This document shows positions 11,846 through 44,895 of a stretch of DNA of 64,000 bases, in pieces; position 1 is the stretch's first letter; each line of letters opens with the position of its first letter. A program made the translations under genes and the position numbers. The DNA is from Utricularia gibba (taxonomy: Eukaryota > Plantae > Magnoliophyta): NCBI GenBank assembly GCA_002189035.1, contig NEEC01000014.1, forward strand, positions 186,001-250,000, in the 5' to 3' direction. The notes below the pieces were generated by a model that was given only the letters and a program-made list of their open reading frames with translations, did no database searches and was not told where the DNA came from.

Positions 11846-13442
11846 CTACGGTGCATCGTTAACGAGCTGCAATCCTCCCCAACCTTGTACCCCATCGAGG
11901 CACTGTCTAGTATGAGGTCCCGTGGTGTCCGTATTTGTCCCTTTTCTCGCCTTACAATCGTAGTATGGTGGTACATGATAACATGGGTCAATCGACTGAA
12001 CTCGACGACATGGATGGTAATGGCCTGTCTGATTCTTAGACAGGAAGATCATCCGTGATTGTAACCCGCCTAAACCTTGAGCTGCGTACCCAAAAGTTGA
12101 TGATTGGCTTGTAAGCAACTCGTCGCTTAAACCAAGCAAATATATTTCCGCTAAGGCTTTTTTATCATGCTCTAGGTTTTCAAGAAGTTGGTGCTCTTCA
12201 AAGCTTGGTTGATGAACTGCAACCATTTCTCCTGTCACAGTAGCATGCGCCCAATACATCTTCCTCATTTGTTCGAAGTAGTCACGATACAACGATGCCA
12301 ATAGTACAACAATTTTCTTCCTTTTGGGTACGGATCTGGTCAAATTTCCATGGTCGTGCTGATAAACTGATGGAAGTAAACCCTCATTCGCGGTGCATGA
12401 GAGAATTAGATTGAAAACGTCTTCGACTGGGGGTGATAGAAAGTATTAGTTCGAATTTGGATCCCCAATTGAAAGTCAGCATCAGATAAATAAGTATCAT
12501 AGAATCTTCTGACAAACCCCCAAACTACATCTCCAGGACTGAATAAATATCGAGCTAAATGATAAAAAACTGTTTCCTTATCCTGAAATAAGTTATCCAG
12601 CTTTTTTTGGAAGGACATCATGGAGAACAAGGAGGAGCAAAATATTGATTTGACCGTAATATCAACCATGGAACATCTTGAATATATGAGTGGTCTTCGT
12701 CACAGTAAAAAAGTTTATCAAAACTGTCATACGCATTATCCAAATGGACGTATACATAGGAGTAAGGCAATAAACCACTTGAATTATCTAATAAATTTTT
12801 TCTCAACAATTGACCAAAACTTTCGTTGGATTCCCTATGAAAACTTTGAAGTTTATCATTTAGTGGGAAATCCGAAGGAAGCAACCAGGAACTTTTAGGG
12901 AAGGGTTCACAAAAGAGAGAATAAACCGCTTTATTCTGAATCAGAAGAACTCTGTCAGTGAGAATAGCATATAAGAATGTAGAGGCAAGAGTAATGATTC
13001 TATTGCCCATGCCGTCATTCGTTTCAATCCATATGACATATTTGCATTCAGATGTCACTAGGGACATGCTACTTCTGAGGGCATCTACTGTCATGTTGTA
13101 CAAATGTGTATGTGGGCCGCAGATTTTGTGTAAATTCTCGTAACTTCTTAACTTGGAAATGAGATCTGCAGAAGGCTTTCTTATTACTGGATGTTTATGC
13201 AAGAGAGAATCATACCTACTAGGACAAGAACCTCCATCAAATCCACTTGGAAAAAGCTCATCATCAAGTTGCGTGGAGGAATCAATAGCTTGATTAAGCG
13301 TATACTGCCACGCACTCCATCTTGATGATTTGAAAGCGGAGAGCAAGTACAGTATCCCCATCCCAAATAAGACAAAGATGGCCACCAATTTAAGAGGAGG
13401 CAACCAAGGTTTCTTCAATGAATTACTGAAATGTGTTTCCAT
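11846..13442 (-). CDS. GT37 xyloglucan/AGP alpha-1,2-fucosyltransferase (FUT family), single exon, with two 1-nt frameshifts
   Basis: Type II TM N-terminus and motifs SKLRSYENLHKICGP, CKYVIW, GMGNRIITLAS, LFCEPFP, RSNQYFAP, GIQIR, EIYLLGLSD, STFGYAAQGLGGL, PCYHVPPYYDCKA. Repairing 1-nt deletions at ~12633 and in the G run 12429-12433 gives a full-length protein of ~530 aa. Confidence 0.9.
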
Positions 13443-13699
13443 GATTACGTGGCACAAAGTAGATTGATATCTACAATGATCCTTATGCCATTACAAGCAT
13501 GAATGGCATGGAGGGAGCACTGTTTTGGTGATCCAAATGAAACGTGTGCGTCTATGTGCTTTAAAAAGTTGGAAAGCCAGACATATTTATACGCAACACC
13601 TGAGCTTCTTCTACAGAATTCCTGCAAATATATTAATTGTAAGGAAATGCCTAAGCAATAATAATAAAAAAAAAGCGTTGAAAAATTTGAGCATATTTT

Positions 13700-14240
13700 G
13701 GATAATCCAAACTGGAGAATCCTAGGGTCATAGGGCGACAAAGCCCAATAATAGCTACATGTGAATCATTTAGTGATACCGGGTCAAGTTAAGAACCCCT
13801 TTTTATAAAGAAGAATTCGTGAGTACAGCAGGTGTGGGTTGGATCAACCCGATCCAACTAAACCCTGAAATTGTTGGCTTATGTTTGGGTCATTATCTCT
13901 ACTTGTGAATCTGCAACTTTTTAATGATTTTCATTTTAGTAAAGATATGAACTACGCACTAGCTTTGAACGAAGCAGGGTTGCTGCATCGAATAAGTTCT
14001 CAAGGGACAACACCTAAACACTAAGCCCTATGGTGTGCTAGAGAATCATGTGATGTCCTGGATCTTAGTTACTCTCACAGACTGTAACCTTTATAAGGTC
14101 AACGTGTTTGAATTGACACGGATTTAGATGCTACTGCATTTTTTAACTGTTAATGCATTACCCGGGTAGTAAAAAATAAGTATTTGGTAGTATTCCCTTC
14201 TGAAGAAGAAAGATTAGAGTTCAACGTCAAGGGTTTGAAT
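13700..14240. repeat. Segment upstream of FUT, duplicated at ~47260-47780
   Basis: Colinear shared blocks such as AATAATAGCTACATGTGAAT, GTGCTAGAGAATCATG, TGTAACCTTTATAAG, GAATTGACACGGATTT and TGCATTACCCG. Confidence 0.85.
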
Positions 14241-14500: not shown

Positions 14501-15805
14501 TATCTAAAGACTTCTTTGGTTAGAAACTATGAGCGAAACATAACTCAACGATAGGCTCTTTTTCCCTGCTTACATTGATAATATTCACAGCCGCTTCACG
14601 TATAAATATTTGTGTCTTTTTTTTTTTTTCCCATATGTGGATTCTTTTCTACAGCATATACTTTTTGGTATTTGCAAGTTCATAGATGATGAAATCTAGC
14701 GTCTTAGTTCCGGAGTCAAATGAGCAATTCGATATCCATGTTGCAAAACTTACACGCTAATAACTATAAGCTTTTATATATCCATGGGGTGACGTATGGG
14801 GCCGAGGTGTAGGAGTAGCTCATCTACACGAGAGTAGAATAGAATCTGCTTCTTCTTCTTGTTTTTTTTTTTTAATCATAGCAGGAATCATTTGACCAGT
14901 AGGACAGCGTGGATTCCACCGAATCTCTAGGTACTCTCTGATGGAATTCCAAATGCTGGATGCATAATTAATGCGTCATTAATCAAGTCTTCGCCTCATT
15001 AAACCCTATCCAAAATCAGCGTTGTGAAGGTGAAGCGCCCTCTTTGTATTTATTTTGTCGGAGATAAACATAGATTTTCTACTGCCATGACATGCATGAA
15101 CGAGATTAATAAAAAATACAAGGTCAAGGCAAAACAATTTGTTCACCCAAAAAACTCAAAAGAAAAATGGGGGCTGCTCCACCGCATTAGCTATACTGAT
15201 CCACTAATACAATAAATCATTAGTAGAGTGAATGGGCTACGCTCAGCAAGCCAATTATGATGAAAGAAATAAAGAGATGTAGAAAATTACAATAACAGTT
15301 CATCAATCGCAATCAAAAAGAAAAACAGACGCTACTTATACTCATAGTCCACAAAACATCAGATTGCTCACCACACATTTGCCTGGTTCAGAACAGGTTC
15401 CCATTGGCTCCTTTTTGCTAGCCCAAAAAAGGTGCTCGGGTCAAGTCCACTTAACTTGCATAATGCATACAAGTTGACCCGGTCAGGTATATTTAGTTGA
15501 CCCAAACTAAATATTAAACATGCTCAATATATTTATACCCAACAGTCTAAAATTGGGTGGTTATGAAATTATCGGTGATTCATCGGGTGCATGCGTAAGT
15601 AAGCACCCATAGTCTAAAAGTATGCCGTCGTTTTTTTTTTTTTTAATTTTAATATCCTTAATTATTAATTTATTAATAAATATTTATTCATTTAATTAAT
15701 TAATCAAAATCTTAATTTATTCATTTGATTTTCTCATATTTTCATATGTCTTCATTTAGATTACTTGATAATCACCCATTGATTACTATTATTGCCTTTC
15801 ATTCT

Positions 15806-16445
15806 TGTTATGAGTGAAATCGATATCGGGTGGGAGGCCAATTTAAGATGATAGGTGCGATCGGGAATGCCACACTTAGTCACGTTCTTCACGGTTGGTA
15901 CGATTGAAATAAGAGTGAGCAAAGATTTTTTACGTGGAAATTACCGGAAAACGGAAAAACCACAGAGCTACCTGAGCTCGCTGAAAAAGAGCTTCACTAG
16001 ATGGAGGTCGCGAAGAGGAGAATACAAATTGAAGAAATCTTTTCTTGTCCAACCCGCTTTTCATCGTAATTCCTTATATTTATAGGAGAGCTCAACCTAA
16101 CCGAACCCTGACATCTACGAATATCATGCGCTGGGCGAGGGATCGAGCAAGCGCGGGCGGCGTCTCGCTTGGCGCTCGGGTTTAGGGTTTTTAGGGTTTA
16201 GGGTTTAGGGTTTAGGGTTTAGGGTTTAGGGTTTAGGGCTGTTTCCTACGCCTGCTATACGATCTCACTTTTCAGATATCGTCCGCCTGTTATGCTGTAA
16301 TTCGGCCGCTTTTCAGACTATGTCATCTGGCTAATCTTGTCAGATTTCTAACAGATATCGATCTGCTGATTGACGTTATCCCCTCACGATCTCTTTTGGC
16401 AGCCTTTTAGGAACCGATTACCCTTGACCGATTTATCCCCTATCA
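15806..16445 (-). mobile_element. Solo LTR of the same Tat-type Gypsy family as 33548-41363
   Basis: Colinear with LTR 33548-34074 from TGTTA to CTATCA. Near-perfect TSD ATTCT/ATTCC (15801-15805, 16446-16450). Contains an extra 111-bp insertion. Confidence 0.9.
16181..16238 (+). repeat. Interstitial telomeric repeat (TTTAGGG)x8
   Basis: Seven perfect TTTAGGG units and one TTTTTAGGG variant, preceded by GGG. Confidence 0.97.
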
Positions 16446-16712
16446 ATTCCAAATCCGCAATCATCGTTCATTGATTATTATTTTTATTTTATGGATATTC
16501 AATTTTTAATTAAAACTTGTTTTATTTTAGTATTTTTTAAAAAATAATTTCATATAATTTAAATATTATAAATTAAAATTAGTATGATGCATTCATAATT
16601 TTTAAATCACAAATTGACGTAACCGAATTCATAAATCGACCAATCCATATACCTACACCTATGTATGCTAAGAAATTTATTAGTATTCAAATTTCTTCAC
16701 CCAATCTCGTCA

Positions 16713-19102: not shown

Positions 19103-22100
19103 TGTTGGAAGAAGTGGATGAACAATACGGAATCAAAACAAAGGGTTATAAGAACAATGATAGAATTCTAGAAGTGTTTACTATCATTTATTCCTTAAAC
19201 CAATACAACTTTATAAGGATGGATGATCCCTATCCAACACTAAACTGCTATGAAGTCAATTACAACTTCTTATCTAAATAAACTAACTATATAAGATCAA
19301 TTAACTTCCAGAAGCATACTGCCACTTTCAACCATACCGCAGACTTTCTGGTTTACCAGCCAACACCCGCCCTTAAACAGGAAAGCCTGTGCAAACCAAG
19401 CAAACTCCTGAGACGTATGAAAGCAGTAGCTTTAAGGGACTTGGTGAAGATATCTGCCATTTGATCTTCACCTTTATATAACAAAGCTCTATAATTCCTT
19501 CCTTCACACAGTCTCTAATATAATGAAAATGAGTTCTCATATGCTTGCTGCGAGCATGAAATACTGGATTCCATCCAAGTGCTATGACAGATTTATTATC
19601 CGCATGCAGCTTAGTGGGGAGGTCACAAATGAATCCTAAATTCTCCAGCATGTATCGCAGCCATATAGCATGACAAAAACAAGCGTTTGGAGCAACATAC
19701 TCAGCTTCACATGCTGATAAAGTGACAATGGGTTGCTTCTTTGAATTCCAAACTATAGCAGTGTCAACAAGGAAGAATGTAAAGCCACTTGTACTCCGAG
19801 AATCATCTAAATTGCCAGCCCAATCACTGTCGTTATACCCTTCAAGTTCAAAATTTTCTGCTGTGGCATACCACATACCAAAGTCCATGGTCCCTTTCAA
19901 ATATCTAAGAATTCGCCTTGCTGCCTTAAGATATATCTCCCTCGGCTTCTTCATGAAACGATAAACCAGTCCCACAAAAAAATAAGATATCAGGTTTGGT
20001 GCTAGTGATGTATCGAAGAGAACCAACAAGACTCTCAAATGAAGTGGCATTAACCTCTTTAGAAGTATCATTAATGCTCAACTTCACATTATATTCTGAT
20101 GGAGTGTCCACCGAATTACACTGAGTCATGTTGTACCTCTTAAGAAGATCTTTCACAAAGCCTTCTTGAGTGATAAAAATTCCATTGGATAATTGTTTGA
20201 CTTCAATGCCTAGATAGAAGTGCATTAAACCAGCATCAATCATCTCAAATTCTGCATTCATCTTCAACTTAAATTCTTTTACTTTATCTTCCTTGCTACC
20301 AATGACCAATAAGTCATCCACATAGATGCACACAATCAACATATCAGCCTGCTCCTTACCGCGTTCATAGAGAGAATGCTCATGAGGACATTGAATGAAG
20401 TGTCTCCCTTGTAAGTATGCATCGATTCTTTGATTCCAAGCATGTGGTGCTTGTCTCAAGCCATAAAGAGCTTTGTGTAACCTCATAACCTTATCTTCAT
20501 CTCCCTTTTTGATATAGTCCAATGGTTGATCTACATATACCTCCTCTTCTGCCATTTAAAAATGCAGCTTTAACATCCACTTGCCATATCTTCCACCTTT
20601 AATGCGCAGCAAGTGAGATAATAATTCTGATAGTTTCCATGCGTGCTACAGGTGTGAAAACTTGATCAAAATCAATTCCTTCCTTTTGTTTATAGCCTTT
20701 AGCCACTAATCTTGCCTTCAACCAATTACTATCACCATTTGATTTTTTTTTAATCTTGTATACCCATTTAACTCCAATAACAGTCTTGTTTGATGGTATG
20801 TCAACCAAGCTCCAGGTTTGATTCTTCTCGATCGAATGAATTTCATCATTCATTGCTCTCCTCCATTCTGGATACTGATTAGCCTCATAAAAATCCAAAG
20901 GTTCAGTATCCACGAATAAACAAAAGTGAGAGAAGTTGCTTGCTTCATGCCACATGTCATCATTCCTTTCTTCTATTAATGATGATGGAAGGTCAATGTC
21001 ATGATAATTAAGGTGCCTTGGAATCCATCTCATTTTCTGTTTCCTACGCGATGAAAATGTGGCAGCATTAGAATCACCAGCTTGTGTTGATAGACCTTAT
21101 TCCTGTTGAGGAACACCACCAGAGTCATCATCAACACTAGACTCCAACCACTCGGGGTCCACATAACTATATGAATGATCTGCTTTTGATAAAGATTTCC
21201 AATCCTAGCTTGCATTTTCATCAAAGACAACATCTCTACTTAACAAAATCTTCCTTATAAGTAGATCAAATAGCCTGCAAGTCTTCGAGTGTTGATCATA
21301 TCCAAGGAACACCAGCTTTTGGGATTTATCATCCAATTTACTTCACATATCATCTAGCTTATGTGCATATGCAACGGATTCAAAAATCCGCATATGGGAG
21401 ATAGACGATTTGATCCCTTTCCAAGCATCCTGTGGAGTCATATTTGCAACACTCCTTGTAGGAGTTCTATTTAAAATATAAATTGAGGTAGCAGCAGCGT
21501 CTCCCCAAAACTCCTTTGACATATTTTTGGTTCTCAGAAGACATCGAATCATATCAAGAATAGTTCTATTTTTTCTCTCAACAACACCATTTTGTTGAGG
21601 TGTCTTGGCGGCTGTAAGTGATTTATGTATACCAAGCTCCTTGCAATAATCAACAAATTGGTTAGGAGTGAACTCACCTCTTCTATCTGTTCTCAAGCAT
21701 TTAATACATAAACCACTCTGCTTCTCAACCTTGGTCTTGAATTCCTTAAAATATTGAAGACATCAGACTTGTTTTTCATCAAATAAATCCACATCTTCCT
21801 GCTATAGTCATCCACGAATAAAAGGAAATAATTTTTATTTCCCGAAATACATGGTTTAATTGAACTACACACATCACCATGTATTAACTCCAAAGGACGC
21901 CTTGCTCTAGACTAGGAAACCTTAGGAATTTATGTGCGTGCTTGTTTTCCAAAAACACAGCCTTCACATATTTGATTTGGTCTAGAGATATGTGGTAAGC
22001 CATTAACCATGTAATTTCTACCCAGTCTTCCTAGATTCTCGAAATTAATGTGTCCAAAACGCATGTGCCAAGTCCAAGCATCATCACCCTAACATGTCTT

Positions 22101-25149: not shown

Positions 25150-28100
25150 ACTTCACTTGGTTCACGAGTCATAAATTGTGATCATGAACATGTATGTCAT
25201 ACTTCTGCGCAAACCAGTGTGATCCAGTGGCACAACTCTCAGAATGGATGATAGAAAAATGATTCGGAAAACCCAAAGGTTTATTGGACACTCCCGCCTG
25301 GGCAACTGAAATCCTTCTTTTGTAAAACTTCAGAGCCCTTCACTGATGGGTTTGAGTTGAAAAATTACAAAGAATACATTATTGTTCACCACGAATGATG
25401 GAGAAGCTTGCTCTTGGGTCTTTTGCCAGGTTTTGAGGACAAATGACGCCTGAACATGTTCCATATGGCTAGTAGTCATCTAATATGGAAACAATTATGT
25501 CGAAGTAACTGTATCACGACACCCTGGCCCTGATATCGAAGAATAATACAAAAGGTTGATCCACATTTTAAATAATAAAATTCTATTTTTTTGTTTGTAG
25601 AAAAATGCAAAAGAAATAGCAGATCATATTGTTTCAGTCTGAACTGGGTTACTCTATCAAAGTTGATGCTGCTAAAATGCTGTATTCCATAGTATTTTGG
25701 AATCATCGAAGAAATATCAGATATCAAATTCTCAGATTTTTGCTGCAGCACATGCCAGAAAGGAAAATCAACTAGACATTCCTTTCATATGAGTACAACC
25801 AAAAGCAAGGAAAAGCTGGAATTAGTACATATAGACCTCTGCGGATCATTCAAAGAGCCATCCTTAAGTGGAAGTAAGTATTTTTTGATATTCATTGATG
25901 ATTATAGCAAATATTGTTAGGTCTATTTCCTAAAATCCAAATCAGAAATGTTCGAGCTATTCAAAAGATTCAAGGCAATATCAGAAAAACAAAGTGGTCA
26001 TAAACTAAAGAAATTAAGGTCTGACAATGGAGGGGTTTTTACCAAAGCTATTGAGTCAATACTGCAACAATGAAGTCATTATTCATGAACTCACTACCCC
26101 TACACACCAGAGTAGAATGGAATTAGTGAAAGAAAGAACAGAACAATACTGAATATGGCAAGATGTTTGCTGTTCGAAAAAAATATGCCACTTGGTTTTT
26201 GGGCAGAAGCAGTCTCAACAACAGTATATTTGTTAAACCTACTTCCCTCAAGAGCCATAAATGGGAAAACTGCAATGGAACTTTGGTTAGGAAAAAGGAA
26301 GTCTATTGGTCACCTAAAAATATTTGGCTCTACATGCTACGTGCATGTCCCAAAAGAAAAACGAACAAAGTTTGATGAACGAGCAAAGCTGGGAATTTTT
26401 GTCGGATACAGTCTTGTGACCAAGGGATATAGAATCTATGTACCTGAAACAAAAGAATTACTCATTAGTAGAGATGTAACGTTTGATGAGGAAAATTGCT
26501 ATACATGGACTAACACAAATTCTGTGTGTACAACAATCACATTTGACAAAAGACCATACCTAGTTCAAGACCCACGATCAACTCAGCACATTGATATTTT
26601 CGCTGGAAATTCATCCAATGATATTCCTGAACCTGAACAGAATATTTATGAGGAGAATGCTGAAGAAAACAGAGTAATGGAAAGAGATGACCTCAACACG
26701 AATGGTTATGAAATGCCTGAAGCTGAAACTCATACAGAAAATCTGGAAATAATGGATGCTATAATATCACTAGCTACTCCAGAGGAAGAAAATCTCACAG
26801 ACTCAACAGAAAATACTACGGATGCTGAAAAGTCATCAAATGAAACAGATGATGATGATTGGGACAGAAAACCAGAAGTAAGAAGACAAAGAATGTTGTC
26901 GAATCTATATCAAGATGGATCACTACACACCTCAAGCGTAATGGAAGATAAAAATGAGAGCTCTACTGCTCTATCGGTCGATGTTCTGTCCTGCTATGCT
27001 ATGTCAGACCCTACGACATATCTAGATGCAAGCAAAGATGAGAAGTGGAAAGCAGCAATGCAAAGCGAAATAGATTCAATTCTAGCAAATAATACATGGG
27101 AATTAGTGGATACTCCAGCACACTTGATCACCAAACCGATTGGATTGAAATGGATCTATAGAACCAAACTAAATGCTGATGGGACCATCAACAAATATAA
27201 AGCCAGACTCGTCGCCAAAGGGTACTCACAGATTGCTGGAGTGAATTATGGTGAAGTCTTCGCTCCAGTTGCAAGGTTTGACACCGTGAAGTTGTTACTT
27301 GCCATATCGGCCTGCCAAGGATGGAATGTCCATCACATGGATGTTAAAACTGCCTTTCTGAACGGGGTACTTACAGAAGAAATTTACTGTCAACAACCAG
27401 AAGGATTTATATTGAAAGGAGAAGAAAGGAAAATACTGAAACTCAAGAAGGCACTTTATGGACTAAAACAGGCACGAAGAGCTTGAAACGAAAGGATAAA
27501 TGCCTTCTTTGAGACATAAGGCTTCTCACAAGTGCATGGAGAACAAACGTTGTTTGTCAAAAACGTTCAAGATGACAAGTTAATTGTAAGCATATATGTT
27601 GATGACTTACTGTTAACCTCCAACAGTAATGTATTAATGGCAAGTCTGAAGGAAAGACTTAAGAAAGAGTTTGAAATGACTGACTTGGGAGATATGCACT
27701 ATTATTTGGGAATAGAAGTTGACCAGCAAATTGGAAAAGGGACATTCCTACATCAGAAAAAATACTCTTTAGAATTAATCAAAAAATTTAATCTAGTAGA
27801 TGCGAATGGATGTCGTTCTCCAATGGACACTGGAAAGCAAATGGAAAAATCAATGGATGATGCAGAGTGTGATCAAACTCTTTACCGAAGCTTGGTAGGA
27901 AGCCTAATCTACCTTAGCCACACTCGGCCTGATCTTTGCTATAGCGTAAATCTCTTGTCAAGATATATGAAGAGTCCAAAAATGAGCCACTACCAATCTG
28001 CGAAAAGAGTGTTGAGGTATGTAAAAAGGACATCATCCTATGGTCTATTCTTCACATACTCAGAAGGAAGCTATCCTACTCTAAGCGCATACTCGGACAG

Positions 28101-28828
28101 TGACTATGCGGGAAGTGCAGATAGTAAGAGTACCTCTGGATATTTGATCTGCCTGAATGACAACCCTTTCTCTTGGTCAACCAAACGTCAAATTGTTGTA
28201 GCGCAATCAACAACAGAGGCCGAGTACATATCTGCCTCGCTTGCTTCGAATCAATGTCTCTGGTTGAGACAATTAATCAAGGAAATTGGGTTTAAATAAG
28301 GACCCATACCGTTAAGAGTGGATAACAAGTCCGCTATTCAGATTGCGAAAAATTCTTCTCAATTCAGCAAGGCGAAACATATATCCGTGAGATTCCATGC
28401 CATACGAGATGCTGTGAAAAGGAAGAAGATCACTATACAATATGTGACCTCAGAAAATCAATTGGCCGACATATTGACTAAACCTCTCGGGAGACAAAAG
28501 TTCGAAGAAAATAGACAAAAAATTGGAGTTCACAAGGCTGCCGATTTACCGGGAGTTACCTCCATCAGCGACGGGGGGAGTGTTGACAGTCGCTCATGAG
28601 GAATGGGACGATGTTGAATTGAAGACGGAGGCTGCTAGAGAAAACTCTGGAATATTGAAAAAAAAAAATCTATTTGGTATTAAAACTTTATTTTGTCACG
28701 TGCACACACGTGTTTGAACACCCGAGCCCTACTTATCATATTGTAAAACAAGAAACAGTAGTTTTCTGGCCGCCTGAGTGCTCTTGAATCCTTTGAGTCC
28801 TTTCGTGCTTGAATCCCAAAACTCTACA
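25150..28828 (+). mobile_element. 5'-truncated Ty1/Copia element
   Basis: Decayed zinc knuckle and protease (~25150-25700), pre-integrase CSTCQKGK, integrase, RT ([14 protein letters not shown]), RNase H (DSDYAG, ADILTKPL). PPT 28571-28580; 3' LTR 28581-28828 (TGTTG...CTACA). No 5' LTR found. Confidence 0.9.
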
Positions 28829-30185: not shown

Positions 30186-30737
30186 ATTTAGTTAATTTTT
30201 ATTCAAATCATAATACTAAATCTGAAATTTAAAAATATCATAATATAAACCCTAAAATCTAAACTTAAAATCTAAAACTTAAATTTCAAATCTTAAACCC
30301 TTAAATCTTAAATCACAAAACTAAATATCAAGTTCTAAAATCTAAACCTTCAACTCTAAACCTAGAACAGCGGAGGTAAGATGTGGCAAATTTAAATCTG
30401 AAACCAAAAAAATTAAATCCCAATTAAAATCTTAAACCTTAAATCAGTAATCTTAAAAAATTATGAAATCTTAAACCCTAAACTCTAAATCAGTAATCAT
30501 AAAATTATGAAAACTTAACATATAATATTTCTAAGTTATAAATACTAAATATTAAACTTTAAAATTGAACCCCTAAATTAGAAATCCAAAAAAAAAAAAC
30601 ATTCAAAAACGAAAAAAGCATAAAGTAGGGTAAAGCGCAAAGAACAACTTATTTTTTTGGTAATTTACAAATCTTTGCTATAACTAGGGTAAATGGCAAA
30701 TAAAATAAAAAAGTTCAGGTATTTAACTCATTTCCCC
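30186..30737. mobile_element. Non-autonomous MULE-like/MITE-like insertion with degenerate telomere-like repeats
   Basis: The right end resembles a MULE TIR (reverse complement GGGGAAATGAGTTAAATACCTGAAC). The interior (~30245-30600) has degenerate CCCTAAA/CTTAAA units. Flanked by the direct repeat GACTTCACGTATACT. Confidence 0.5.
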
Positions 30738-33547: not shown

Positions 33548-36500
33548 TGTTATAGTTAAAATCGGTATCCTGTGAGAGGCTGATTTAAGGTGATAGGCAC
33601 GATCGGGAATGTCGCACTTAGTCGCATTTTTCACAGTTGGTTCAATTGAAGTAAAAATGAGCAAAGATTTTTACGTGGAAACCATCGGAAAGCAGAAAAA
33701 CCACGGAACTATCGAAGCTTGCCAGAAAAGGTTTTCACTAGATAGAGGTGGCAAAGAAGAGAATACAAGTTGAAGAATCCTTTTTCCTTTTTTTTTCGTT
33801 CGTCATAATTCCTTCTATTTATAGGAGAGCTCAATCTGACCAAACCTTGACATCTGCAAATACCGGTTGCTTTTTGCAACTGCTATACGATCTCGCTTTT
33901 CAGATATCGGCCGCCTATTATGCCGTAATTCAGCTGCTTTCCAAACTATGTCATATGATTATACCTGTCAGATTTCTGACAGATATCGGTCTGTCGACTA
34001 GCATTATCCCCTCAGATTCCCCTTTTGGCAGTCTTTTAGGAACCAATTACCCTTGACCGATTTATCCTCTATCATTCAGCCCCTCTGATTTACCGATATT
34101 GGCCCTTCCAGTGTAAGTCGGGGAATCAGAATCACTATAATGCCGACTTTTGAGATGCTGCCTTCCATGCATGAGCCATAAACTGCTTTGTATCGATATC
34201 TCTGCCACGCGTCGGCTCGTAAATATGCCACATTTTTTCCCGCCCATCCGGGGTACCTCAAACGTCACGTCGCTTCGTCTCCTGAGTCCTTCCATTATAA
34301 ATATCCGCACCCCTTGTCATTTCTCCTCTTTGCTTTCTTCATTCGCTCTCGAGATTCCAACGCTCTCTGAACTCTGCAGTGCTTGCCGCCGTGTTATCCA
34401 CCGGAGATTACAAATTTTCCAGATATCCACTCCTTCTCCGTAACTTTTTGCATCCCTACGGTTGCTTAACTCCCTTTTAGGTCTTTGGAAATTTTTCACG
34501 GGTAGCTATCGCCTTTCTGAGTCGTTTAGCCTCTCTAACTTCTGCCTCATTCTAGGGTTTGGGGCTTCTTTCAATTTTTCGAAAATGGGTAGGAGATCTA
34601 GTGAACTTAATATCCCCTCTCTTCACATTCAGTACTCGATCCCTGATGAGTATCAACTTTCTCTTGCTCGAGATGCCGAAATCCCTTGGGGGATAGGCGA
34701 GGACTCCTTGCCTCCATTCAGTCTTCCGGTTCCGCTTGCCAATTTCGAGAGTGGTTTACGCTTCCCACTCCATCCTTTAATAGTCCACTTTCTCTACACC
34801 TTTGCGATTCTGCTTTATTGCCTTGCCCCGAATTCCATATTCTGTTTCACTACCTTCCTCTTTTGACTCTGGTAGATTCCCTCCATCTCTTCAAGGTTGC
34901 CGTGCGTAAAGCGAAGTCCTCGATGGATGGCCGATCTCATTTTCAATTCCGCCGATTTGAAGATAACCCCAACTTTGTTGTTAAAGCCCCCGATACCCAC
35001 CATGATTGGTGGTCTTCCTTCGTTTGGGTAGCTCCCCCTTTGGGTTTTCGGTGGAACTTCCCAGTCGATCCCCCAACTCCTTTTAGGATCAAAATCTTTG
35101 GTGCGTATCGGTCTTCTTCCGAATCTCGTGAAGTCCTTTATGAGAGGCTTAGTCGAGGCTCAGTTCGGTACGAGTCTCGTGCCTTGATGTTCTCGGGTGA
35201 GTCGCTGAAAGATCAAGTATTATCGGTCGTTCTCGAGACCCCCATTGGCCCGATATTGTTCCTTTTGACGGCACCGATTCGAGAAGCCTTCCTCTTAGCC
35301 TCTCTCCATCCTTCCCTCTTGTTTCGGCTTCACCCCCGATCCCCCAACCTGTTCAAACCGGGGCCCCCAAGAAAAAGAAGAGGGTTAAGACAGTTACACA
35401 CAAACCCTCAAAGAGGTAAAGAGGTAGTCGGGTTCAGCTTTCCCGAGTCTCAGAATCGGCACTATGCCTTATTGCTTTTCCTACTTTCGTTTTCAGCTGA
35501 AGAGATGGCTCGAAGAAGCTCCCTGGAAGATTCGGTGATGGCGCGATTCTCTGCCGAGATGCAGAGGATGCAGGAACCCAAGGAGCCCTCCCCTGCACCA
35601 GTCTGTCTCCTATTTAATAGTTACCGCAAATTCCCGATTATAATCTTTTTTCGGTTTTTCTTTTAGGCTGATACGATTGGAGCTCAGCTAGACGCCGTCG
35701 ATCCTTCCTCGGGGGAAGATCACGTAGTAGAAGTCTCCGAGATCCGGGAGTTGACTCCCCGTCCTTCAGCCGGGAAAGGGAAAGAGAAACTTCCTCCATC
35801 ACCCGATCTCATTGATACTCCCATTCCTAATGCGAGATTCTTTTCGGCTGGTGCTTCAACATCGTCTCCCCCAATCGAGATACAGAGGGATTTTGCCCTC
35901 GTAGAAGTAAGGGATAACCCGGTGCTTCCTCTACCTTCAGTTCCAACTGAACTAAGGAGAATCCTGGATGGAGCTATGCCTAGTACCTCGGATGTTCGGC
36001 CGGAGGCGGTACTTGAAGGGATCTGGCAGGTACGTATCCCGTTTCCTCTTCTAAATTCTAAGTAGTCGGTCCTTGACTTGGAATATTCTTTCAAGCTTTA
36101 ACTCTTGGGTGGGGAGTGGTTAGAGAGATTGGTTCTCAATTGGAGGCAGTCTCTTGGCTTCAAGCCTAGGTTGTGGCTCAGAACGCCCAAATAAAGTTGT
36201 TGGAGGAGGAGATGAGTTCGTTGAAGACCGTTTTAGGGAAACGCACCCGCCAGGAGGAAGAATTGCGGAATGTGATCGAGGAAATGGGAAAGGCGGTTGA
36301 CGATGCTAAATCAGAGAGAGAGGGCTTCAAAGTCCGATTTGAGGAGGCAGAAGCGGAGTTAGAGCATGCCAGGGGCCGCATTTCAGCACAAGAGGCTGAA
36401 TTACTTGATCGACAAGTATCTCGGCAGGGTCTTCTAGATGACTTTGTCAACTCGGCCTGTTTTGCCGAACTCTCCGATATCTATGTAGGAGACTTAATCG

Positions 36501-39500
36501 GCTTACTTCTATATTGTCAAAGGCGATAGTTCAGCCGGGAATTCGGGCTTTCAATCATGGATCCGCGCTTCAACAGGGTAAACCCCTTGACGAAGGATGA
36601 GAACATGCTTGATGTTATCGCAGATACTTTCCAAGCCCCGGAGTTTGGGTTCGAAGCTGATCGGGAGTGGCTGATTGCGCTGATTCGGGCGAGGATAGGG
36701 AGAGAGAATGAAGTCAAGTTGAGAGCCAGGATGGAGCGACATACTGGTTCCTCTACCAATCCTCCCGTTAATCCCCCATCTCCTCCTTCACTTTAGTGAC
36801 CTTTTTAACTTGGTGTATTTTCCCTCTGCTGTGGGGGCTTCTTGAACATTTTTGATATCCCAGTTCGGGATTTCCTTCTAATTTACTCCATTTTTTGTGC
36901 ATCACTTTTGCCTTTGATGATATCTTTCTTCGGGGGAAGCCCCGAGTTGGTTTTTTATGTCTATTACGTGCTTAGACTTGGGAGGTTCGCCTATGCTTTT
37001 GTGATCCGATAGTGGGTGTCTCTTTGCCAACCCTTTGGTTGGGCTTTTTTATTTTAGTTTGCCTTAGTATTTCCTTATGCGAGCTGAACAGCTGCTAGGG
37101 AAGTAAGTCGGAACCCCTAGCATGTTCAAAACGGTCATTGGCCTGGTCATTTCGACCACAAAATCGGCAAGAGGTTGGGCCTTAATTGCTGTTCTCGATT
37201 TAAACTCAATATCCATTGTACTCAATTCGACCGCCCATTTGGCAACCCTTCCGGAAATCTCTGGTCGAGATAGGATATTCTTCAGAGGCTGATTGGTGAA
37301 TACCACGATATGACCTCAGTTTTGTGGCCGCCATCTTCAGAGCCAAGATGAATTTTTCTGTCACCGAATACCGGGTTTCGGCCAGTAACAAAACCTTGCT
37401 CACATAATACACTGGCAGGTGTTTATCTGCCGAGATGGTTGTCAAGACTGCGCTGACTGCAACGGGCGATATAGACAGATATAGTCCTAAGGGCTCTCCT
37501 GCTTTTGGAGCCACAAGAAGCGGGGGTGATGAGAGATATTCCTTGAGTTTTTCAAAGGCAAGCCGGGCAATCCTCGTTCCATTCTAGAGCGTTTCCCTTT
37601 CACAAGACCTTGAAGATGGATGCCGACTTATCGGTTGATTGAGATATGAAACGGCTGAGGGCAGCTAATTTACCCGTGAGGCTTTGATACTCCTTGATTG
37701 TCCTTGGGGGTTGCATTTCGCATATTGCCTTAATCTTCTCGGGGTCAGCCTCGATTCCTCTCTTCGATACGTAATGCCTCAGGAATTTTCCACTTCCCAC
37801 CCCGAAGCAACATTTCAGTGGGTTGAGTTTTAACCCGTATAACTGGCACAAAGAGAAACAAGAATCCAAATATGCTAAATGGTCTTCTTCATTCAAAAAT
37901 TTTACGATCATATCGTCCACATATACCTCCATCGAGGTACCGATTTCAGAAGAGAATATTTTATTTATCAACCTCTGGTAAGTCGCCCCAGCATTCTTTG
38001 AACTGAAAGGCATGGCCACGTAACAGTAAACCCCATCCTTGGTGTAGAAGGTGGTTTTCGGTTGGTCTCTTTCGGCAACGAAAATTTGATGGTATCCTGA
38101 ATAGGCATCCATGGTGCTCAAGAATCGGGATCCGGCAATGGCGTCTACTAGCTTGTCAATCTTTGGCAAAGGATAAGGGTCCCTTTCGCAGCAGGCGTTG
38201 AGGTCGGTGAAGTCAATGCACATCCTCCATTTTCCCTCGGGCTTCGGGATGATGACTGGGTTGGATACCCACTCGGAATACTGGATCTCCTTCACATAAC
38301 CGGCTTCCAAGAGTTCCCTTGTTTTTTCTTTGATAATTCGGCACTTTTCCTCTGAGAAATGCCATTGCTTCTACCGAGCTGGTTTTGCCCCTGGGTAGGT
38401 ATCAATATGATGCTCGACAACGGATCGATCAATGCCTACATAGTCTGTAGCAGTCCAGGCAAAAATATCGGCGTTCTTCATCAAAAGTTCAACTAACCTC
38501 TTCTCAAATCCGGTGTCCAGATTGGCACCAATGTGGGTTGCTTTCTGCGCATCTTCTGGTACTAATTGCACCGATTTGTACCCTACTGGTTCCATTGCTT
38601 GTCTAGGGGTTATCGGGATTCCTTTTCTACCATCATCACTCTCGGTTTTTTGCACAGGGGTCTCGGTAGGAAGATACATAACAGAACCGGGCGGTTGGTT
38701 GGTCGATGCCCATCGTGCAAATGCCCCTCGATGTCGGGAATTTAATTTTCAAATGCACAGTGGAGGGTATCATACCGAATTGGTTGATGCCGGGTTGCTC
38801 GAGGATGATGCTGTATGAGACCTCTGAATTTAGGATCAAGAATTCCAACCTCTTGGTTTAGTTCTGCCTTGCCGCTCCGAATGTTACGGGCAGGGTTATT
38901 TTCACGATAGTCTGCATGGCCTGCTGATCGAAGGCGTATAACTCCATGCGCACGTGGCGGATGTTTCCCTCGTTGGATGATGCCAGTAACCCGGCTACTT
39001 CCTTCTTCATGATGTTGCAGGAGGATCCTTGATCAATAAGAATCCTTCTTACCTTGGTGCTCCCGCATATTCCCGATACCACCAAAGGTTCATCTCTTGC
39101 GGTTGGGGCAACTGGGACGTCTCTGCCAGAGAAGCTGATCTCTTCTTTTTCCCAAGCAGTTTTCTCAGTCGGACCATTTCCGATCTCGAAGACTTCTCCT
39201 CTTTTGGCGTCATCCAAATATCTCTTCCGCGCTTTTCCGGATACATCCATTTCAGTCCCTCCGGATATCACATAGATTTCCCAAATGTAGGGGGGACTGC
39301 CTTGCATTTGGTGTGAATTCCGTGAACTTTCTGGTATGTCTTGTCCTCCTCCAAGATTTGGTTCCCTGCTGGCTTTTGGGTCTTCCCTCACTGGTTTTGG
39401 GGGGAACTTTTGATATCGGTTACCTTCATTCCCGGTTCGTTCGTTACGTCCTCTTTTCCGGTCTGTCATCAATGCGGGGTTTCGTATCGCGTTACTCATT

Positions 39501-41363
39501 CCCCGCCAGCATGATATTGCTCGATCATCCTCTTCATTACTCGGCAGTTGACAGTATCATGCCCGCTAATCTTGTGTATTTCGCAATAGGCATCTATTCT
39601 GGTTGGCTCCACCTGATATATTTCACGGCGCTTGTTCGGCCTGGACCCCCGGTTAAGTTGGGTCTCTTGTTGCGGGCTCGGATGGATCTCCATGCAGCTT
39701 TTCATCTTGGCCCTGAGGTTGTTGTCAACTCGGATGTACTTCATGATTTTCCTTAGCAATTCTCCGAGATTCTTTGGTGGGGACTTTGATAGACTCTGTC
39801 CCAATTTCGACATTCCTAAGGCCCGTTTCATTATTTCCACCCTCTCCTTTAAATTCAGCTGGACATCTTGTGCTTGGCAGTTAAATCGGTCGATGAACCT
39901 TCTCAAACTCTCTTTTCGGTGGTCATACCAAACAGAGTATAATGCTGCCTTTGAAGGTGGAGCTTCGATGTTGACAAAGTATCGGGTAGTGAAAAGTAGC
40001 ACTAACTCCTGATAGGATGCCACGCAGCATGGTTCTAACTTTTTGAACCAAGTCTTTGCTCCTTTTTGGAGCGAGCAAGCGAACAGCTTACACTTCTTGG
40101 TCTCTGAATGTCGAACCATGGACATCCTCATATCGAAGTCAGTTACATGTGACTTGGGATCCCCTTTCCCGTCGTACGTGGGTAATTTGTCTGGGACCCT
40201 GAATCCTCTCTCGGGTTCTTCCTCGACTATATCGTCCGAGAAGGGGTCAAAACGCAGCGTTGTGGTCCCAACTGCTCCCTCAACCCACTCTTCAAGGCCA
40301 AAGCAATGTCGGCCAGAACGTCCCTCTCCCGGTGGATACGTTCTGATCGAAAACGTCCCTAAATCCCCTACCCTCTCTTCTCCCCATCGATCTCTGCTTG
40401 TTGATAAGTCTTCTCCTCTCGCGGATCTGATCTAACTCTCTCTTCAACTCTTCTTCCCTTTCTTCCAAGATTTTTCCCACCATGTTTTCCCTATCAGTTC
40501 CTGGCTCATATATAACTTGGTTGCGCCTCTTTCTTTGCAGCATCTCCTCCTCGGTTTCGGATTCAGTCTCCATATCCGGGGGTAATCCGGAATAAGAGGT
40601 TGCTTCTCCGTTCGTGGTGCAGTTTCGGGTGTTCCTTCTGGCGTTGGAGTTGAGACTTGAAGGTGCCCGGAGGTTCTCGAAGATTTCCGTTAGCAGGGCC
40701 TTCAGTTGCTCCCTGCTGGTGATCATAAGGCCGAGGTCTCGTGCGTCGGCGCTTCCGTCCTGAGCTGGGTCGATGGCTGTGCTATTTTCCGCCATGATTC
40801 ATGATTAACGAGTGGCTCCTGTGGGTTTCTCGAGTGGGGCTGTGGAACGTCGCCCCACGGTGGGCGTCAAAAATGTTACGAGTAAAATCGGTATCCGGTG
40901 GGAGGCCGATTTAAGGTGATAGGCGCGATTGGGAATGTTGCACTTAGTCGCGTTTTTCATGATTGGTTCAATTGAAGTAAAAATGAGCAAAGATTTTTAC
41001 GTGGAAACTGCCGGAAAGTGGAAAGACCACAGAGCTACCGGAGCTCGCCAGAAAAGGTTTTCACTAGATGGAGGTGGCGAAGAAGAGAATACATGTTGAA
41101 GAATCCTTTTTCCTTTTTTTTTCGTTCATCATAATTCCTTCTATTTATAGGAGAACTCAATCTGACCGAATCCTGACATCTGCAAATACCGGTTGCTTTC
41201 TGCAACTGCTATACGATCTCGCTTTTCAGATATCGGTTGCCTGTTATGCTGTAATTCGGCCGTTTTCTAAACTGTGTCATATGGCCATACCTATCAGATT
41301 TCTGACAAATATCAATCTGTCAACTGACATTATCCCCTCAGAGTCCCTTTTAGGGTCCTTTAG
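33548..41363 (-). mobile_element. Ty3/Gypsy Tat (Retand-like) retrotransposon, internally deleted
   Basis: LTRs 33548-34074 and 40874-~41363 (the latter truncated). PBS TGACGCCCACCGTGGGG (40853-40869, tRNA-Arg type) and PPT at 34075-34086. Gag, protease (ILIDQGSS), RT (YVDD) and partial RNase H are present; the integrase core is absent. Confidence 0.93.
34585..36796 (+). pseudogene. Antisense accessory ORF of the Tat element (Transposase_28-like N-terminus, coiled-coil C-terminus), degenerate
   Basis: GLRFPLHPLIVHFL...LAPNS motif at 34750-34840 and an Glu/Lys-rich coiled coil at 36173-36450. It lies between pol and the 3' LTR on the opposite strand, with stops, frameshifts and intron-like segments. 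Confidence 0.7.
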
Positions 41364-42124: not shown

Positions 42125-44895
42125 TTATGAAAAAAAATTAAACATTCTTTGAAATGCATTTTTCTTACGTTGTTGTTGATTCGATGGTCCTGGTGGGTCA
42201 AAGTTCAGGTGTTGTGGACGTTCTTGTATAGAGGCACGTGGCGGTTGAGGAATCGGCTCGAAGTTGTGTCCATATGGCACATCCACAGATGATCTATGTG
42301 GTTGTGAATGACTTGGAGTTGTGTCTTCATCCACATGCATATATCCTGTGTTCGCATGTCTACGTCTTCCTCTATCCATGTTCATTGGAAAGTGTGTACT
42401 ACGATGGCGTCCACGATGAACATGCCTAGCACGTTCAGGATCAACACGAAGAACCACCAGTGGTGAGAGCCAATGTTTCTCAGTTCTGAGTGGCTGAAAT
42501 TGATTTCGATATGCATTCAACAGACGCCGTAGAAGGTGGATTGGATTGAGTAATGTTAGTGGATCGATCCCAAGAAGCTTGCAAGCCTATTCATGCAAAA
42601 CAATTTATATATCATTAATATTGTATTTAAAAATATAAAACAAGTTGTGGTTTGAGAAATTACCTGTTGCGCATGAGAGCACGGTATACCATAATTTTGC
42701 CATTTGGTACAAGTGCAAGTTTGATCTTTGATTTTGATGAAACACACATTCTCCGAGCCATTCTTCCGAATAGTTGTGACTCAAACCACCTTTTGTCGAC
42801 GGTCATAAACCTCCACATTTGTATATGGGATTGGTCTATCCCATCGCTTTAGTAGGAGTTCAGCTTCTTTGCTGAATACTTTGTTTTGACGCTCCATATT
42901 AAGAACCTCTTCCAAACCTTCATACATATATTTTTTGCACCGTGTGAATGTTGCCTACAGGAGGTACACACATATTAGCTTAAAATATTTTATTTAAAAT
43001 GATGTTGATATAATACCTGAGCTAATGCTGTTAATGGAAGATGTCGTGCACCCAAAAGCACACCGTTCATTCCTTCTACTTGATTTGTTGTCATAGTACC
43101 ATATCTCTTGCCACCATCATGAGACAAAGTCCATTTTTGCGCAGGAATTGCATGCAGGTATTCCCATGCCCTAACATTAAGATGTTTAATGTTAGTCATG
43201 TATTCTTCAAATTTATCAATGCAACTTGTATGTGCCGCTTTGTTGAACCAATCTCTGACTCCGGGAGTTTTAAATTTATCCATAAGATTTGCTCGAAGAT
43301 GTCGAATGCAATATCGATGACATCCTCCATGCTCTTCACTAAACGCAGGCACAAGTTGTGCTCCCTTTCTTATTGAACCACATTGATCAGATATTAGACA
43401 TGTTGGCTTATCCAATGTAATATAAGTACCAATGTGTTGTAAAAACCAATGCCAAGATTCATCTGTCTTCTCATCTACAACAGCAAAGGCAAGAGGCAAC
43501 ATCTTCCGAAGTGGTGTAAGTGTCACTACAATAAGTAGTTTATGCTTGTAAGAGGAATACAAATGTGTTGCGTCAGATAACAGGGAGTGTATGCTGGTAT
43601 GCACGTATACACGGTCCAAATGCCCAAAACACATAATTTAATGTTTCGCCATCTTGCCGATGTTTGTAGTCAATTACTGTTTCTTGATTTTGAAGCATTA
43701 CTTCCTGCAAAAAAGAAGGGAGTTTCGGAACTGACTCCTCCCAAGTACCATAGAGCAATTGAAATGCTCTTTGCCTTCCAAACCAAGCTCGGTGATATGG
43801 TATAGTATAACCGGTTTCCTGTTTGATTTTAGTAACAATTGTAGATACTTTGGTCCCAATATCAGCTTGAACATACGGCTTGGCCTTTTCTGCAATATAC
43901 GTTACATTGATATTCTTGTGATTAAAAAACCTTCCTCCAAGGCGCCGACAAGTATGAGGCTCAATCAGTTTATTCACCTTCCATCTATTGATTTTTTTAT
44001 AATGTGCTGCACGAATTCTCCATCTACACTGTTGTTCTCCAAACATGGGGCAACGAAGATCTAGAACTCTTGGCTCACTATCATGCACAATATATTCCTT
44101 GCCAATTCTGATCATGTGATTTCGCACAGCATTACGAAAGTCTTCTTTATCTGTAAATAGTTGACCAATAGTAAATGGAGATTCATATTCCTCTTCCTCG
44201 GGTTCAATAATATTTTCATCATTTGTATCATTTTCATCATCAGACTCATTGGTTTCAGGTGGGAGTTCTGCTCCTGGAACTTGGTGTTCATTGTCATAAT
44301 CCCAATAAGCATCACCATCAGGATTTGGAGCCACTCCAAAATCATAATCTGCATACTCTTCTAATATATGAGATTTGAATTAGATTCATAATACATATCA
44401 TACATTAAAATTATAATATATCATAAAATGCTAAAGTTAATAAAATTAATTATACAACATACCTTCTTCAATTTCCCTTGAAGCTGTTGAAACATCATTA
44501 TCTTCAACATTAATATAACTACTTGGAAAGTTGTTAAAATATGTTGAGGGATCTCCTAAATAGGAGGGAGTGACAGATTTGCTGGAACTAACATACAAAT
44601 CCACCGGTAAAGTAATATGATTTGGATGAAAAACATAAGAAAGTTCCATCTGTGAATAAATAGGCATGTATCGCGTTGTATTACTTTCCTGATCATAGTA
44701 TTGGGCAGATAGATTAAGCGTATATTCGCTGGAGTTGATTCCACAAAATGCAAACAATTGATTGATGAGATCCTTCATTTAAATATTTATATCAAAATCC
44801 ATAAATCCTACCGGTGGCATATCATAAGTTGTAAAATCTCCATAGTTGATGATATTGCCTCCAGCAAAAATCCTCACACGCACCAGCTTCCTCAT
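42125..44895 (-). pseudogene. MURA-like transposase, disrupted
   Basis: MuDR domain (FTIGQLFTDKEDFRNAV...CRWRIRA...HTC), MULE DDE region (ISDQ...HRYCIRHLRAN) and SWIM finger CTCTKWQNYGIPCSH. Several frameshifts and an early TAA near 44780. Confidence 0.88.

What the first reader, a model, noticed from the sequence alone, without database searches (positions are those of the whole stretch)
16126..16236. Clean 111-bp insertion of a GC-rich hairpin fused to telomeric repeats inside a solo LTR
Seen: against sister LTRs (33548-34074, 40874-41363), this LTR has an extra 111 bp with no LTR loss and no TSD. The insert is 52 nt of GC-rich sequence that can fold (CGAGC/GCTCG and AAGCG/CGCTT stems), joined to GGG(TTTAGGG)8; the last GG is shared with the LTR. 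Established: short interstitial telomeric sequences arise at repaired breaks, and in mammals some carry reverse-transcribed telomerase RNA fragments. Inference: this is either a captured subtelomere-telomere junction or a cDNA of structured RNA lying 3' of a CUAAACCC template. In the second case it would point to this species' telomerase RNA.
Basis: partly seen in the sequence, partly recalled or inferred. Interest (0 to 1): 0.75.

Follow-up and report, generated by a model that had tools for sequence, protein, structure and literature searches.

The report
Telomere-repeat repair patch inside a solo LTR
A dead plant retrotransposon end-repeat carries a clean 111-base patch, made of a GC-rich foreign piece followed by eight chromosome-end repeats, that looks like the scar of a repaired DNA break; I could not test whether the foreign piece was copied from the plant's telomerase RNA.

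Summary
Window 16126-16236 is an extra 111 bp in a solo Ty3/gypsy LTR (15806-16445). No LTR bases are lost, there is no target-site duplication, and a GG is shared at the right junction.

The patch is a 52-nt leader (73% GC, CpG-rich), then GGG, then eight G-strand telomere units. One unit is TTTTTAGGG.

Three corrections:
- The claimed hairpin folds no better than shuffled sequence.
- The two "sister LTRs" belong to one element, so they are one independent witness. They differ about 20% from this LTR.
- The LTR's sense strand is minus, so the patch lies in U3, about 40 bp upstream of the TATA box.

The leader matches nothing in the window, in Rfam, or in metagenome and prokaryote contigs beyond chance 21-23-mers. 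Its composition is reached by only 0.1% of windows here, so the donor is unusual.

Best reading (0.65): a one-step break-repair patch of the interstitial-telomere kind. The donor is unresolved: chromosome-end or rDNA junction about 0.3, telomerase RNA about 0.22, other GC-rich filler plus telomerase about 0.3.

The scan noted other telomeric fillers in this genome (s1-191000, s1-181111), but not this insert.

The parts
15806..16445 (-). Solo LTR of a Ty3/gypsy family (TG...CA ends). It is 640 bp with the insert and 529 bp without. The sense strand is minus, by analogy with the full element at 33548-41363.
   Evidence: Alignment A1. blastn gives 78-85% identity to the two LTRs of the full element. 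gag and RVT_1 lie on the minus strand between those LTRs. No internal retroelement sequence lies on either side.
15801..15805 (.). Left copy of the LTR's target-site duplication (ATTCT).
   Evidence: Read directly. It matches ATTCC at 16446-16450 in 4 of 5 positions.
16446..16450 (.). Right copy of the LTR's target-site duplication (ATTCC).
   Evidence: Read directly.
16126..16177 (+). Unique GC-rich leader of the insert: 52 nt, 73% GC, 23 G against 15 C on the plus strand, 9 CpG (observed/expected 1.36). The donor is unknown.
   Evidence: It is absent from the sister LTRs. It is unique in the window, with no shared word of 11 or more bases. Only 0.1% of 52-nt windows here reach this GC content. 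It has no Rfam match and only chance 21-23-mer matches in high-GC bacteria.
16178..16238 (+). Interstitial telomeric array, G-strand on plus: GGG, then TTTAGGG, TTTTTAGGG, and six further TTTAGGG units. There are no substitutions.
   Evidence: TRF score 104, pattern search, and direct reading.
16237..16238 (.). GG shared by the last telomeric unit and the resuming LTR. This is the microhomology at the right junction.
   Evidence: In alignment A1 the sister LTRs read CC|GGTTGC, while this LTR reads ...TTTAG|GGCTG.
16077..16084 (-). TATAAATA box of the LTR on its sense (minus) strand. The insert begins about 41 bp upstream of it, so it lies in U3.
   Evidence: Read. It is conserved in all three LTRs.
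33548..34074 (-). 3' LTR of the full-length comparison element. It shows the empty site, ACC|GGTTGC.
40874..41363 (-). 5' LTR of the same element, truncated at its outer end. It also shows the empty site.
   Evidence: K2P to its partner LTR is 0.13.

Best explanation
The insert is a one-step break-repair patch of the short interstitial-telomere kind.

Proposed sequence of events:
1. A double-strand break opened U3 of this LTR between C16125 and the GG now at 16237.
2. The left 3' end was extended, without resection, by 52 nt copied from a GC-rich, CpG-rich donor somewhere else in the genome or transcriptome.
3. That extension ended in GGG, and eight telomere units follow in frame. They were either polymerised by telomerase on that G-rich end or copied on from the same donor.
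4. The G-tail annealed by its terminal GG to the right end, and the break was sealed by end joining.

Shown: the anatomy, the junctions, the foreign composition and the lack of a local template. Inferred: the break, the order of the steps and the involvement of telomerase.

The donor of the leader is unresolved. My odds are: chromosome-end junction (including an rDNA-telomere end) about 0.3, telomerase RNA about 0.22, other GC-rich filler followed by telomerase about 0.3.

The patch is probably young relative to the LTR family.
For: - The insertion is clean against the empty site in the related LTRs. It shows no loss, no TSD and a 2-nt microhomology on the right.
- The array is real and far beyond chance.
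- The leader is foreign. No word of 11 or more bases is shared with the 64-kb window. The four shared 10-mers match my estimate of about five expected by chance.
- The leader's 73% GC is reached by only 0.1% of windows.
- The size and layout fall inside the documented vertebrate range: TERC-like piece 25-98 bp, repeats 6-205 bp, in-frame nucleotides at the junction, some loci inside LTRs, and 5 of 29 informative loci with unmodified flanks (PMC8537989).
- There are no substitutions in the 59-nt array, whereas the neighbouring element's LTR pair differs by K2P 0.13. At about 6.5% per lineage, about 3.9 changes would be expected, so P(0) is about 0.02.
- An old telomere-like array 14 kb away is heavily decayed.
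Against: - No orthologous or allelic empty site was seen. The only comparison is with one paralogous element about 20% diverged, so the event may have happened in a master copy and not at this locus.
- Polarity (insertion here versus deletion there) rests on composition, not on an outgroup.
- No donor was found for the leader.
- Telomerase involvement is inferred only from the repeats.
- Earlier scan notes (untested) say this genome's telomeres mix TTTAGGG with TTCAGGG at about 1:1. Eight pure TTTAGGG-type units fit that poorly if present-day telomerase made them.
Confidence: 0.65

Rival explanations
1. TERC-ITS-like event. The 52-nt leader is a reverse transcript of part of this plant's telomerase RNA, made at the break by telomerase or another reverse transcriptase. 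It was then extended with template-copied repeats.
For: - The layout matches vertebrate TERC-ITS loci: a leader of 25-98 bp directly upstream of the G-strand repeats, in-frame nucleotides at the junction, a one-step insertion, and sometimes a position inside an LTR (PMC8537989; PMC2246262).
- The GC-rich, CpG-rich composition is very unlike bulk genome and suits a structured small RNA.
- Read in RNA sense (minus strand), the piece after the template-like repeats is C-rich. Land-plant TRs are described as having a C-rich region downstream of the template (PMC6765143).
Against: - It is untested.
- The leader does not fold better than shuffles.
- No Rfam family matches, although I do not know whether Rfam holds a plant TR model.
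- The leader has no U- or A-rich tract of the kind pseudoknot regions usually carry (my own knowledge).
- No plant TERC-ITS is reported in the papers I could search.
Confidence: 0.22
2. Copy or capture of a pre-existing chromosome-end junction. The 52 nt and the repeats were contiguous in the donor, which was a subtelomere-telomere or rDNA-telomere boundary. They arrived together as a DNA fragment, by synthesis-dependent copying, or as cDNA of a TERRA-type transcript.
For: - The orientation is right: unique sequence, then G-strand repeats.
- The one irregular unit (TTTTTAGGG) lies second from the junction, where telomere bases are usually degenerate.
- Untested leads from earlier notes: at least one telomere of this genome abuts rDNA (s1-233699), the rDNA spacer has GC-rich subrepeats (s1-246630), and this window lies about 185 kb from a telomere (s1-290820).
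Against: - No donor was seen.
- Junction-straddling sequence is a tiny fraction of any genome.
- Ordinary chromosome ends here are said to run straight into genes without GC-rich subtelomeres (s1-290820, untested), which would not give 73% GC.
- There is no match to conserved rRNA in Rfam. Only spacers or expansion segments remain possible.
Confidence: 0.3
3. Inherited LTR variant. The insert arose by any of the mechanisms above in the U3 of an active master element, and this solo LTR merely inherited it. It may be one of many copies, and the eight telo-box-like units upstream of the TATA box may have been kept for a promoter effect.
For: - LTR_16k is about 20% diverged from the only comparison element, so it belongs to another subfamily.
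- The insert sits in U3, about 41 bp upstream of TATAAATA on the sense strand. New cis-elements there are tolerated and are copied to both LTRs.
Against: - The repeat array is pristine while the LTRs are old and CpG-decayed. 19 of 30 CpG sites differ between the paired LTRs.
- There is no second copy with the insert in this window.
Confidence: 0.3
4. Assembly or read artefact, such as a chimeric read joining telomeric sequence into an LTR.
For: I have no direct evidence for it. Reads could not be inspected.
Against: The LTR resumes at exactly the next base, with no loss and no duplication, in the same orientation and register. A chimera would not restore the LTR.
Confidence: 0.03

Closest known systems
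Vertebrate TERC-ITS loci (Nergadze et al. 2007, PMC2246262; Sola et al. 2021, PMC8537989)
   Same: A short telomeric array is directly preceded by a 25-98-bp non-telomeric leader and inserted in one step at a break. Nucleotides at the leader's end are in frame with the repeats. Microhomology or unmodified flanks are seen, and some loci lie inside LTRs.
   Different: In those loci the leader is shown to match the species' telomerase RNA, and orthologous empty loci are shown. Here neither could be tested. The organism is a plant with 7-nt repeats and a Pol III-type TR, and I found no report of such loci in plants.
Short interstitial telomeric sequences inserted during double-strand-break repair (primates, rodents, horse; reviewed in PMC6410037)
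   Same: A few exact telomeric units lie at an internal site, with end-joining-type junctions and no TSD.
   Different: Most such loci have no leader or only a few random bases. This one has a 52-nt leader of extreme composition. The empty site is known only from paralogous LTRs.
Filler DNA at plant end-joining junctions (Gorbunova & Levy 1997; Salomon & Puchta 1998; cited from my own knowledge, not read here)
   Same: Plants often patch breaks with tens to hundreds of bases copied from elsewhere, with microhomology at the junctions.
   Different: Filler is usually traceable to nearby or ectopic genomic DNA. Here there is no template within 64 kb, and the filler ends in a telomeric array.
De novo telomere addition (chromosome healing)
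   Same: Repeats start in frame on a G-rich 3' end ending in GGG.
   Different: Healing leaves a terminal telomere. [quoted passage not shown]
Telo-box (AAACCCTA) promoter elements of plant genes (my own knowledge)
   Same: On the LTR's sense strand the array reads as eight telo-box-containing units about 41 bp upstream of a TATA box.
   Different: Telo-boxes are single or double motifs in housekeeping-gene promoters. Nothing here shows any regulatory use, and the LTR is a solo relic.

Membership tests
Short interstitial telomeric sequence inserted at a repaired break | Head-to-tail exact telomeric units at a non-terminal site | tested here: met
   There are eight units with no substitutions and one 9-mer variant. 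LTR and genes lie on both sides.
Short interstitial telomeric sequence inserted at a repaired break | An empty orthologous site showing sudden, one-step appearance | tested here: inconclusive
   Only paralogous LTRs of one related element show the empty site.
Short interstitial telomeric sequence inserted at a repaired break | End-joining signatures at the junctions (microhomology, filler, no TSD) | tested here: met
   There is GG microhomology on the right, a 52-nt filler on the left and no duplication.
TERC-ITS (telomerase-RNA-derived leader plus repeats) | The leader is homologous to the species' own telomerase RNA, on either strand | not testable with these tools
   The TR locus noted by the scan (s1-243404) gives no sequence. 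The by-sequence index was blank even for a positive control. Published TR tables are illegible or not held. A full-text search for the leader's words found nothing.
TERC-ITS (telomerase-RNA-derived leader plus repeats) | The leader is 25-98 bp, abuts the repeats and ends with nucleotides in frame with them | tested here: met
   The leader is 52 nt and ends in GGG, in frame with the first TTTAGGG. The ranges are from PMC8537989.
Captured chromosome-end (subtelomere- or rDNA-telomere) junction | The leader is identical to sequence that abuts a terminal telomere array in the same genome | not testable with these tools
   I had no access to other contigs of this genome. There is no match to conserved rRNA in Rfam.
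Captured chromosome-end (subtelomere- or rDNA-telomere) junction | Orientation: unique sequence, then G-strand repeats, 5' to 3' | tested here: met
   On the plus strand the leader at 16126-16177 is followed by the TTTAGGG array.
Known structured RNA family (Rfam 15) | A covariance-model match to the leader on either strand | tested here: not met
   There was no hit on the insert, even at E<=10 over 106 nt or 601 nt. Nothing in the window reached the gathering score.
Stable hairpin / structured element | Folding energy clearly below dinucleotide-preserving shuffles | tested here: not met
   RNA z = -0.91 and DNA z = +0.09.
Transposable-element insertion | A target-site duplication and terminal repeats of the insert | tested here: not met
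   There is no TSD and there are no terminal repeats at 16125/16126 or 16236/16237.

The most novel reading that the evidence does not exclude
The 52-nt leader is a reverse-transcribed piece of this plant's Pol III telomerase RNA. As far as the papers I could search show, that would make this the first TERC-ITS-type locus reported in a plant. It would be evidence that telomerase-RNA-templated break repair extends beyond vertebrates to a lineage with a ciliate-like TR.
Probability: 0.22. Interest if true: 0.7.

Novelty: new member of a known kind. Interest (0 to 1): 0.4.

Why it matters
Short internal telomere arrays are footprints of how germline breaks were repaired. In vertebrates, a minority carry a piece of telomerase RNA, which is the main evidence that telomerase and its RNA can act at internal breaks.

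A plant example would show that this pathway is older and independent of the vertebrate type of telomerase RNA. If instead the leader comes from a chromosome end or the rDNA, the locus is an ordinary though unusually clean example of plant filler-DNA repair.

This has lost most of its value, because the scan has already noted a TR gene elsewhere in this genome. That same gene makes the test a one-line BLAST.

Tried and rejected
- **Local template for the leader.** No word of 11 or more bases is shared with the window. The four shared 10-mers match my estimate of about five expected by chance. I rejected nearby templated synthesis.
- **Hairpin or structured RNA.** Folding is not better than shuffles on either strand. 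Rejected as evidence.
- **Rfam.** Nothing was found on the insert at E<=10, and nothing in the whole window at gathering score.
- **TR gene in this window.** USE-like motifs occur at chance level. CTAAACCCT occurs only in the array and once at 13858. There is none.
- **Metagenome scan with a 22-mer.** It gave 13 hits, all confined to 22-23 nt inside high-GC bacterial genes. These are chance matches.
- **Prokaryote genome scan with a 21-mer.** It gave one hit in a Solirubrobacteraceae MAG, confined to the 21-mer. This is a chance match, so there is no sign of a bacterial donor.
- **Earlier-findings index by sequence.** It was blank on both strands and also blank for a positive control taken from a noted stretch of my own window. 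The blanks therefore mean nothing.
- **Published plant TR sequences.**
  - Fajkus 2019 Table S3 is illegible in the held copy.
  - The 2021 paper has no held supplements.
  - Song 2019 is not held.
  - A full-text search for the leader's words gave 0 papers.
- **Fetching other loci.** An exact look-up of three window ORFs found none in the protein collection.

Full report
**What is there.**
The LTR runs from TG at 15806 to CA at 16445, flanked by ATTCT and ATTCC, a 4-of-5 target-site duplication. No retroelement body lies on either side, so it is a solo LTR.

Between C16125 and G16237 it holds 111 bases that both other LTRs lack. They read ACC|GGTTGC at that point. No LTR base is lost and nothing is duplicated. 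The final GG can be assigned to the last telomeric unit or to the LTR.

The insert is a 52-nt unique leader (16126-16177), then GGG, then eight G-strand units. Seven are TTTAGGG. TRF scores the array 104. The 14-mer of two units occurs six times here, against 0.07 expected in shuffles.

- *The comparison LTRs are one witness.* LTRs 33548-34074 and 40874-41363 bracket one element. Its gag (39496-40131) and RVT_1 reverse transcriptase (37600-38310) are on the minus strand. It is therefore a Ty3/gypsy element in minus orientation, and its two LTRs count as a single independent witness.
- *The LTRs are diverged.* The pair differ from each other by K2P 0.13. They differ from the solo LTR by 0.25, so the solo LTR belongs to a different subfamily.
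- *The insert lies in U3.* All three LTRs align in the same orientation, so the solo LTR's sense strand is also minus. On that strand TATAAATA lies at 16084-16077, and the insert starts about 41 bp upstream of it. There it reads as eight CCCTAAA units followed by a C-rich piece.
- *The hairpin is not significant.* The RNA minus strand gives -16.4 kcal/mol against -14.2 +/- 2.4 for shuffles (z = -0.91). The DNA plus strand gives z = +0.09. A 73% GC sequence folds that well by composition alone.

**The leader is foreign and unusual.**
- It shares no word of 11 or more bases with the other 64 kb. Its four shared 10-mers match my estimate of about five expected by chance. It was therefore not copied from nearby, as polymerase-theta-type templated insertions usually are.
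- It is 73% GC with 9 CpG (observed/expected 1.36). Only 0.1% of 52-nt windows in this window are that GC-rich, this one included. A random genomic donor is thus unlikely. The donor should be one of the few GC-rich classes of a roughly 40% GC plant genome, such as rDNA spacers or expansion segments, a GC-rich small RNA, or a GC-rich repeat.
- Rfam gives nothing on the insert, even at E<=10 over 106 or 601 bases. That excludes conserved rRNA cores, snRNAs, 7SL, RNase P/MRP and the telomerase RNA families Rfam holds. I do not know whether a plant TR model is among them.
- A 22-mer scanned against metagenome contigs gave 13 hits. A 21-mer scanned against prokaryote genomes gave one. All are confined to the searched word inside high-GC bacterial DNA, so they are chance matches.

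**Age.**
The 59-nt array has no substitution. The neighbouring element's LTR pair has diverged by K2P 0.13, mostly by transitions, and 19 of its 30 CpG sites differ. At half that divergence per lineage, about 3.9 changes would be expected in 59 nt, so P(0) is about 0.02.

Fourteen kilobases away, 30218-30518 is a roughly 300-bp telomere-like array in C-strand orientation that is badly decayed by C-to-T change. With C and T collapsed it aligns end to end to (CCCTAAA)n, scoring 313 against 86 +/- 17 for shuffles. The patch at 16.2 kb is therefore young by the standards of this region. The age of the solo LTR itself cannot be read from paralogues.

**Mechanism.**
The anatomy is that of a short interstitial telomeric sequence laid down at a repaired break. 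There is no TSD, no terminal repeats and no loss. Filler lies on one side and 2-nt microhomology on the other. The G-strand repeats lie 3' of the filler, starting in frame on its terminal GGG.

My best reading (0.65) is a one-step patch:
- The left 3' end was extended by the leader.
- The repeats were then added by telomerase, or copied on from the same donor.
- The G-tail annealed to the right end through GG.

The break, the order of steps and telomerase's role are inferred. Only the junction anatomy and the foreignness of the leader are shown.

**Comparison with what is known.**
The closest described system is the vertebrate TERC-ITS (PMC2246262; PMC8537989). In 41 loci a 25-98-bp piece of telomerase RNA abuts 6-205 bp of repeats. 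These were inserted in one step at breaks, often with in-frame nucleotides at the junction, sometimes inside LTRs, and with unmodified flanks at 5 of 29 informative loci. The present insert fits all of those formal features.

The defining feature, identity of the leader with the species' TR, could not be tested. In vertebrates, 36 of 41 loci have the TERC-like piece in RNA sense upstream of the repeats. It comes from the scaRNA or pseudoknot domains. The test must therefore use both strands and the whole TR.

[quoted passage not shown] A C-rich RNA-sense leader is compatible with this, but that is weak evidence.

**Why the decisive test was not run.**
- The scan's earlier notes say a TR gene was found elsewhere in this genome (s1-243404), but they give no sequence.
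- The by-sequence index returned nothing for the leader on either strand. It also returned nothing for a positive control from a noted stretch of my own window. These blanks carry no weight.
- Three window ORFs are not in the protein collection as exact sequences.
- Published TR tables were illegible or not held. A full-text search for the leader's words found no paper.
- That the genome is Utricularia gibba, that the window lies about 185 kb from a telomere, and that its telomeres mix TTTAGGG with TTCAGGG are leads from earlier notes. I did not establish them here.

**Rivals and odds.**
For the donor of the leader:
- A chromosome-end junction, including the telomere-rDNA end that earlier notes describe: about 0.3.
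- Telomerase RNA: about 0.22.
- Another GC-rich filler (rDNA spacer, mitochondrial GC-rich repeat word, another RNA) followed by de novo telomerase addition: about 0.3.
- The remainder is unknown.

Separately from the donor question, there is about a 0.3 chance that the event happened in the U3 of a master element and that this solo LTR only inherited it. The single, 20%-diverged comparison cannot exclude this. An assembly artefact is unlikely (0.03), because the LTR resumes at exactly the next base.

**Verdict.**
This is a real and clean telomere-repeat patch of a known kind, with an unusually long leader of unusual composition whose origin is open. It is moderately interesting now. It would become clearly interesting if the leader matches the TR, and ordinary if it matches a chromosome end or rDNA. 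One BLAST against the full assembly would settle this.

Noticed in passing
window 30218-30518 (+): A roughly 300-bp decayed telomere-like array lies in C-strand orientation, built of AAATCTA, AAACCCT and AAACCTT units. With C and T collapsed it aligns end to end to (CCCTAAA)n, scoring 313 against 86 +/- 17 for shuffles (max 133). It is an old interstitial telomeric tract 14 kb from the pristine one and in the opposite orientation.
   Followed up: partly
window 33548-41363 (-): This is a full-length but old Ty3/gypsy element with gag and RVT_1 on the minus strand. Its LTR pair differs by K2P 0.13, with 52 transitions against 5 transversions, and 19 of 30 CpG sites differ. Its 5' LTR (40874-41363) is about 37 bp shorter at the outer end.
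   Followed up: partly
window 13858-13866 (+): A single exact CTAAACCCT (telo-box-like) motif lies about 400 bp upstream of the xyloglucan fucosyltransferase ORFs (11846-13457, minus). It is the only such motif in the window outside the array.
   Followed up: no
window 16126-16185 (+): The insert opens with ATG and reads through 19 codons to a TAG supplied by the first telomeric unit. This is most likely coincidence, and it is too short to search.
   Followed up: no
window 57597-57762 (+): A 33-bp GC-rich tandem repeat has 5 copies at 90% match. It is one of only seven spots in the window that reach the GC content of the insert's leader, and it shares no word with the leader.
   Followed up: no
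window 26155-28299 (+), 55739-56641 (-), 43573-44334 (-): Other transposon remains lie here: Ty1/copia reverse transcriptase split over two ORFs, a copia gag/Pol_BBD fragment, and a MuDR transposase DNA-binding domain.
   Followed up: no
The search of earlier findings, by sequence: The by-sequence look-up returned nothing even for a 121-nt stretch of a finding noted on this very window (19400-19520). It therefore does not cover this genome, and its blanks cannot count as evidence.
   Followed up: yes
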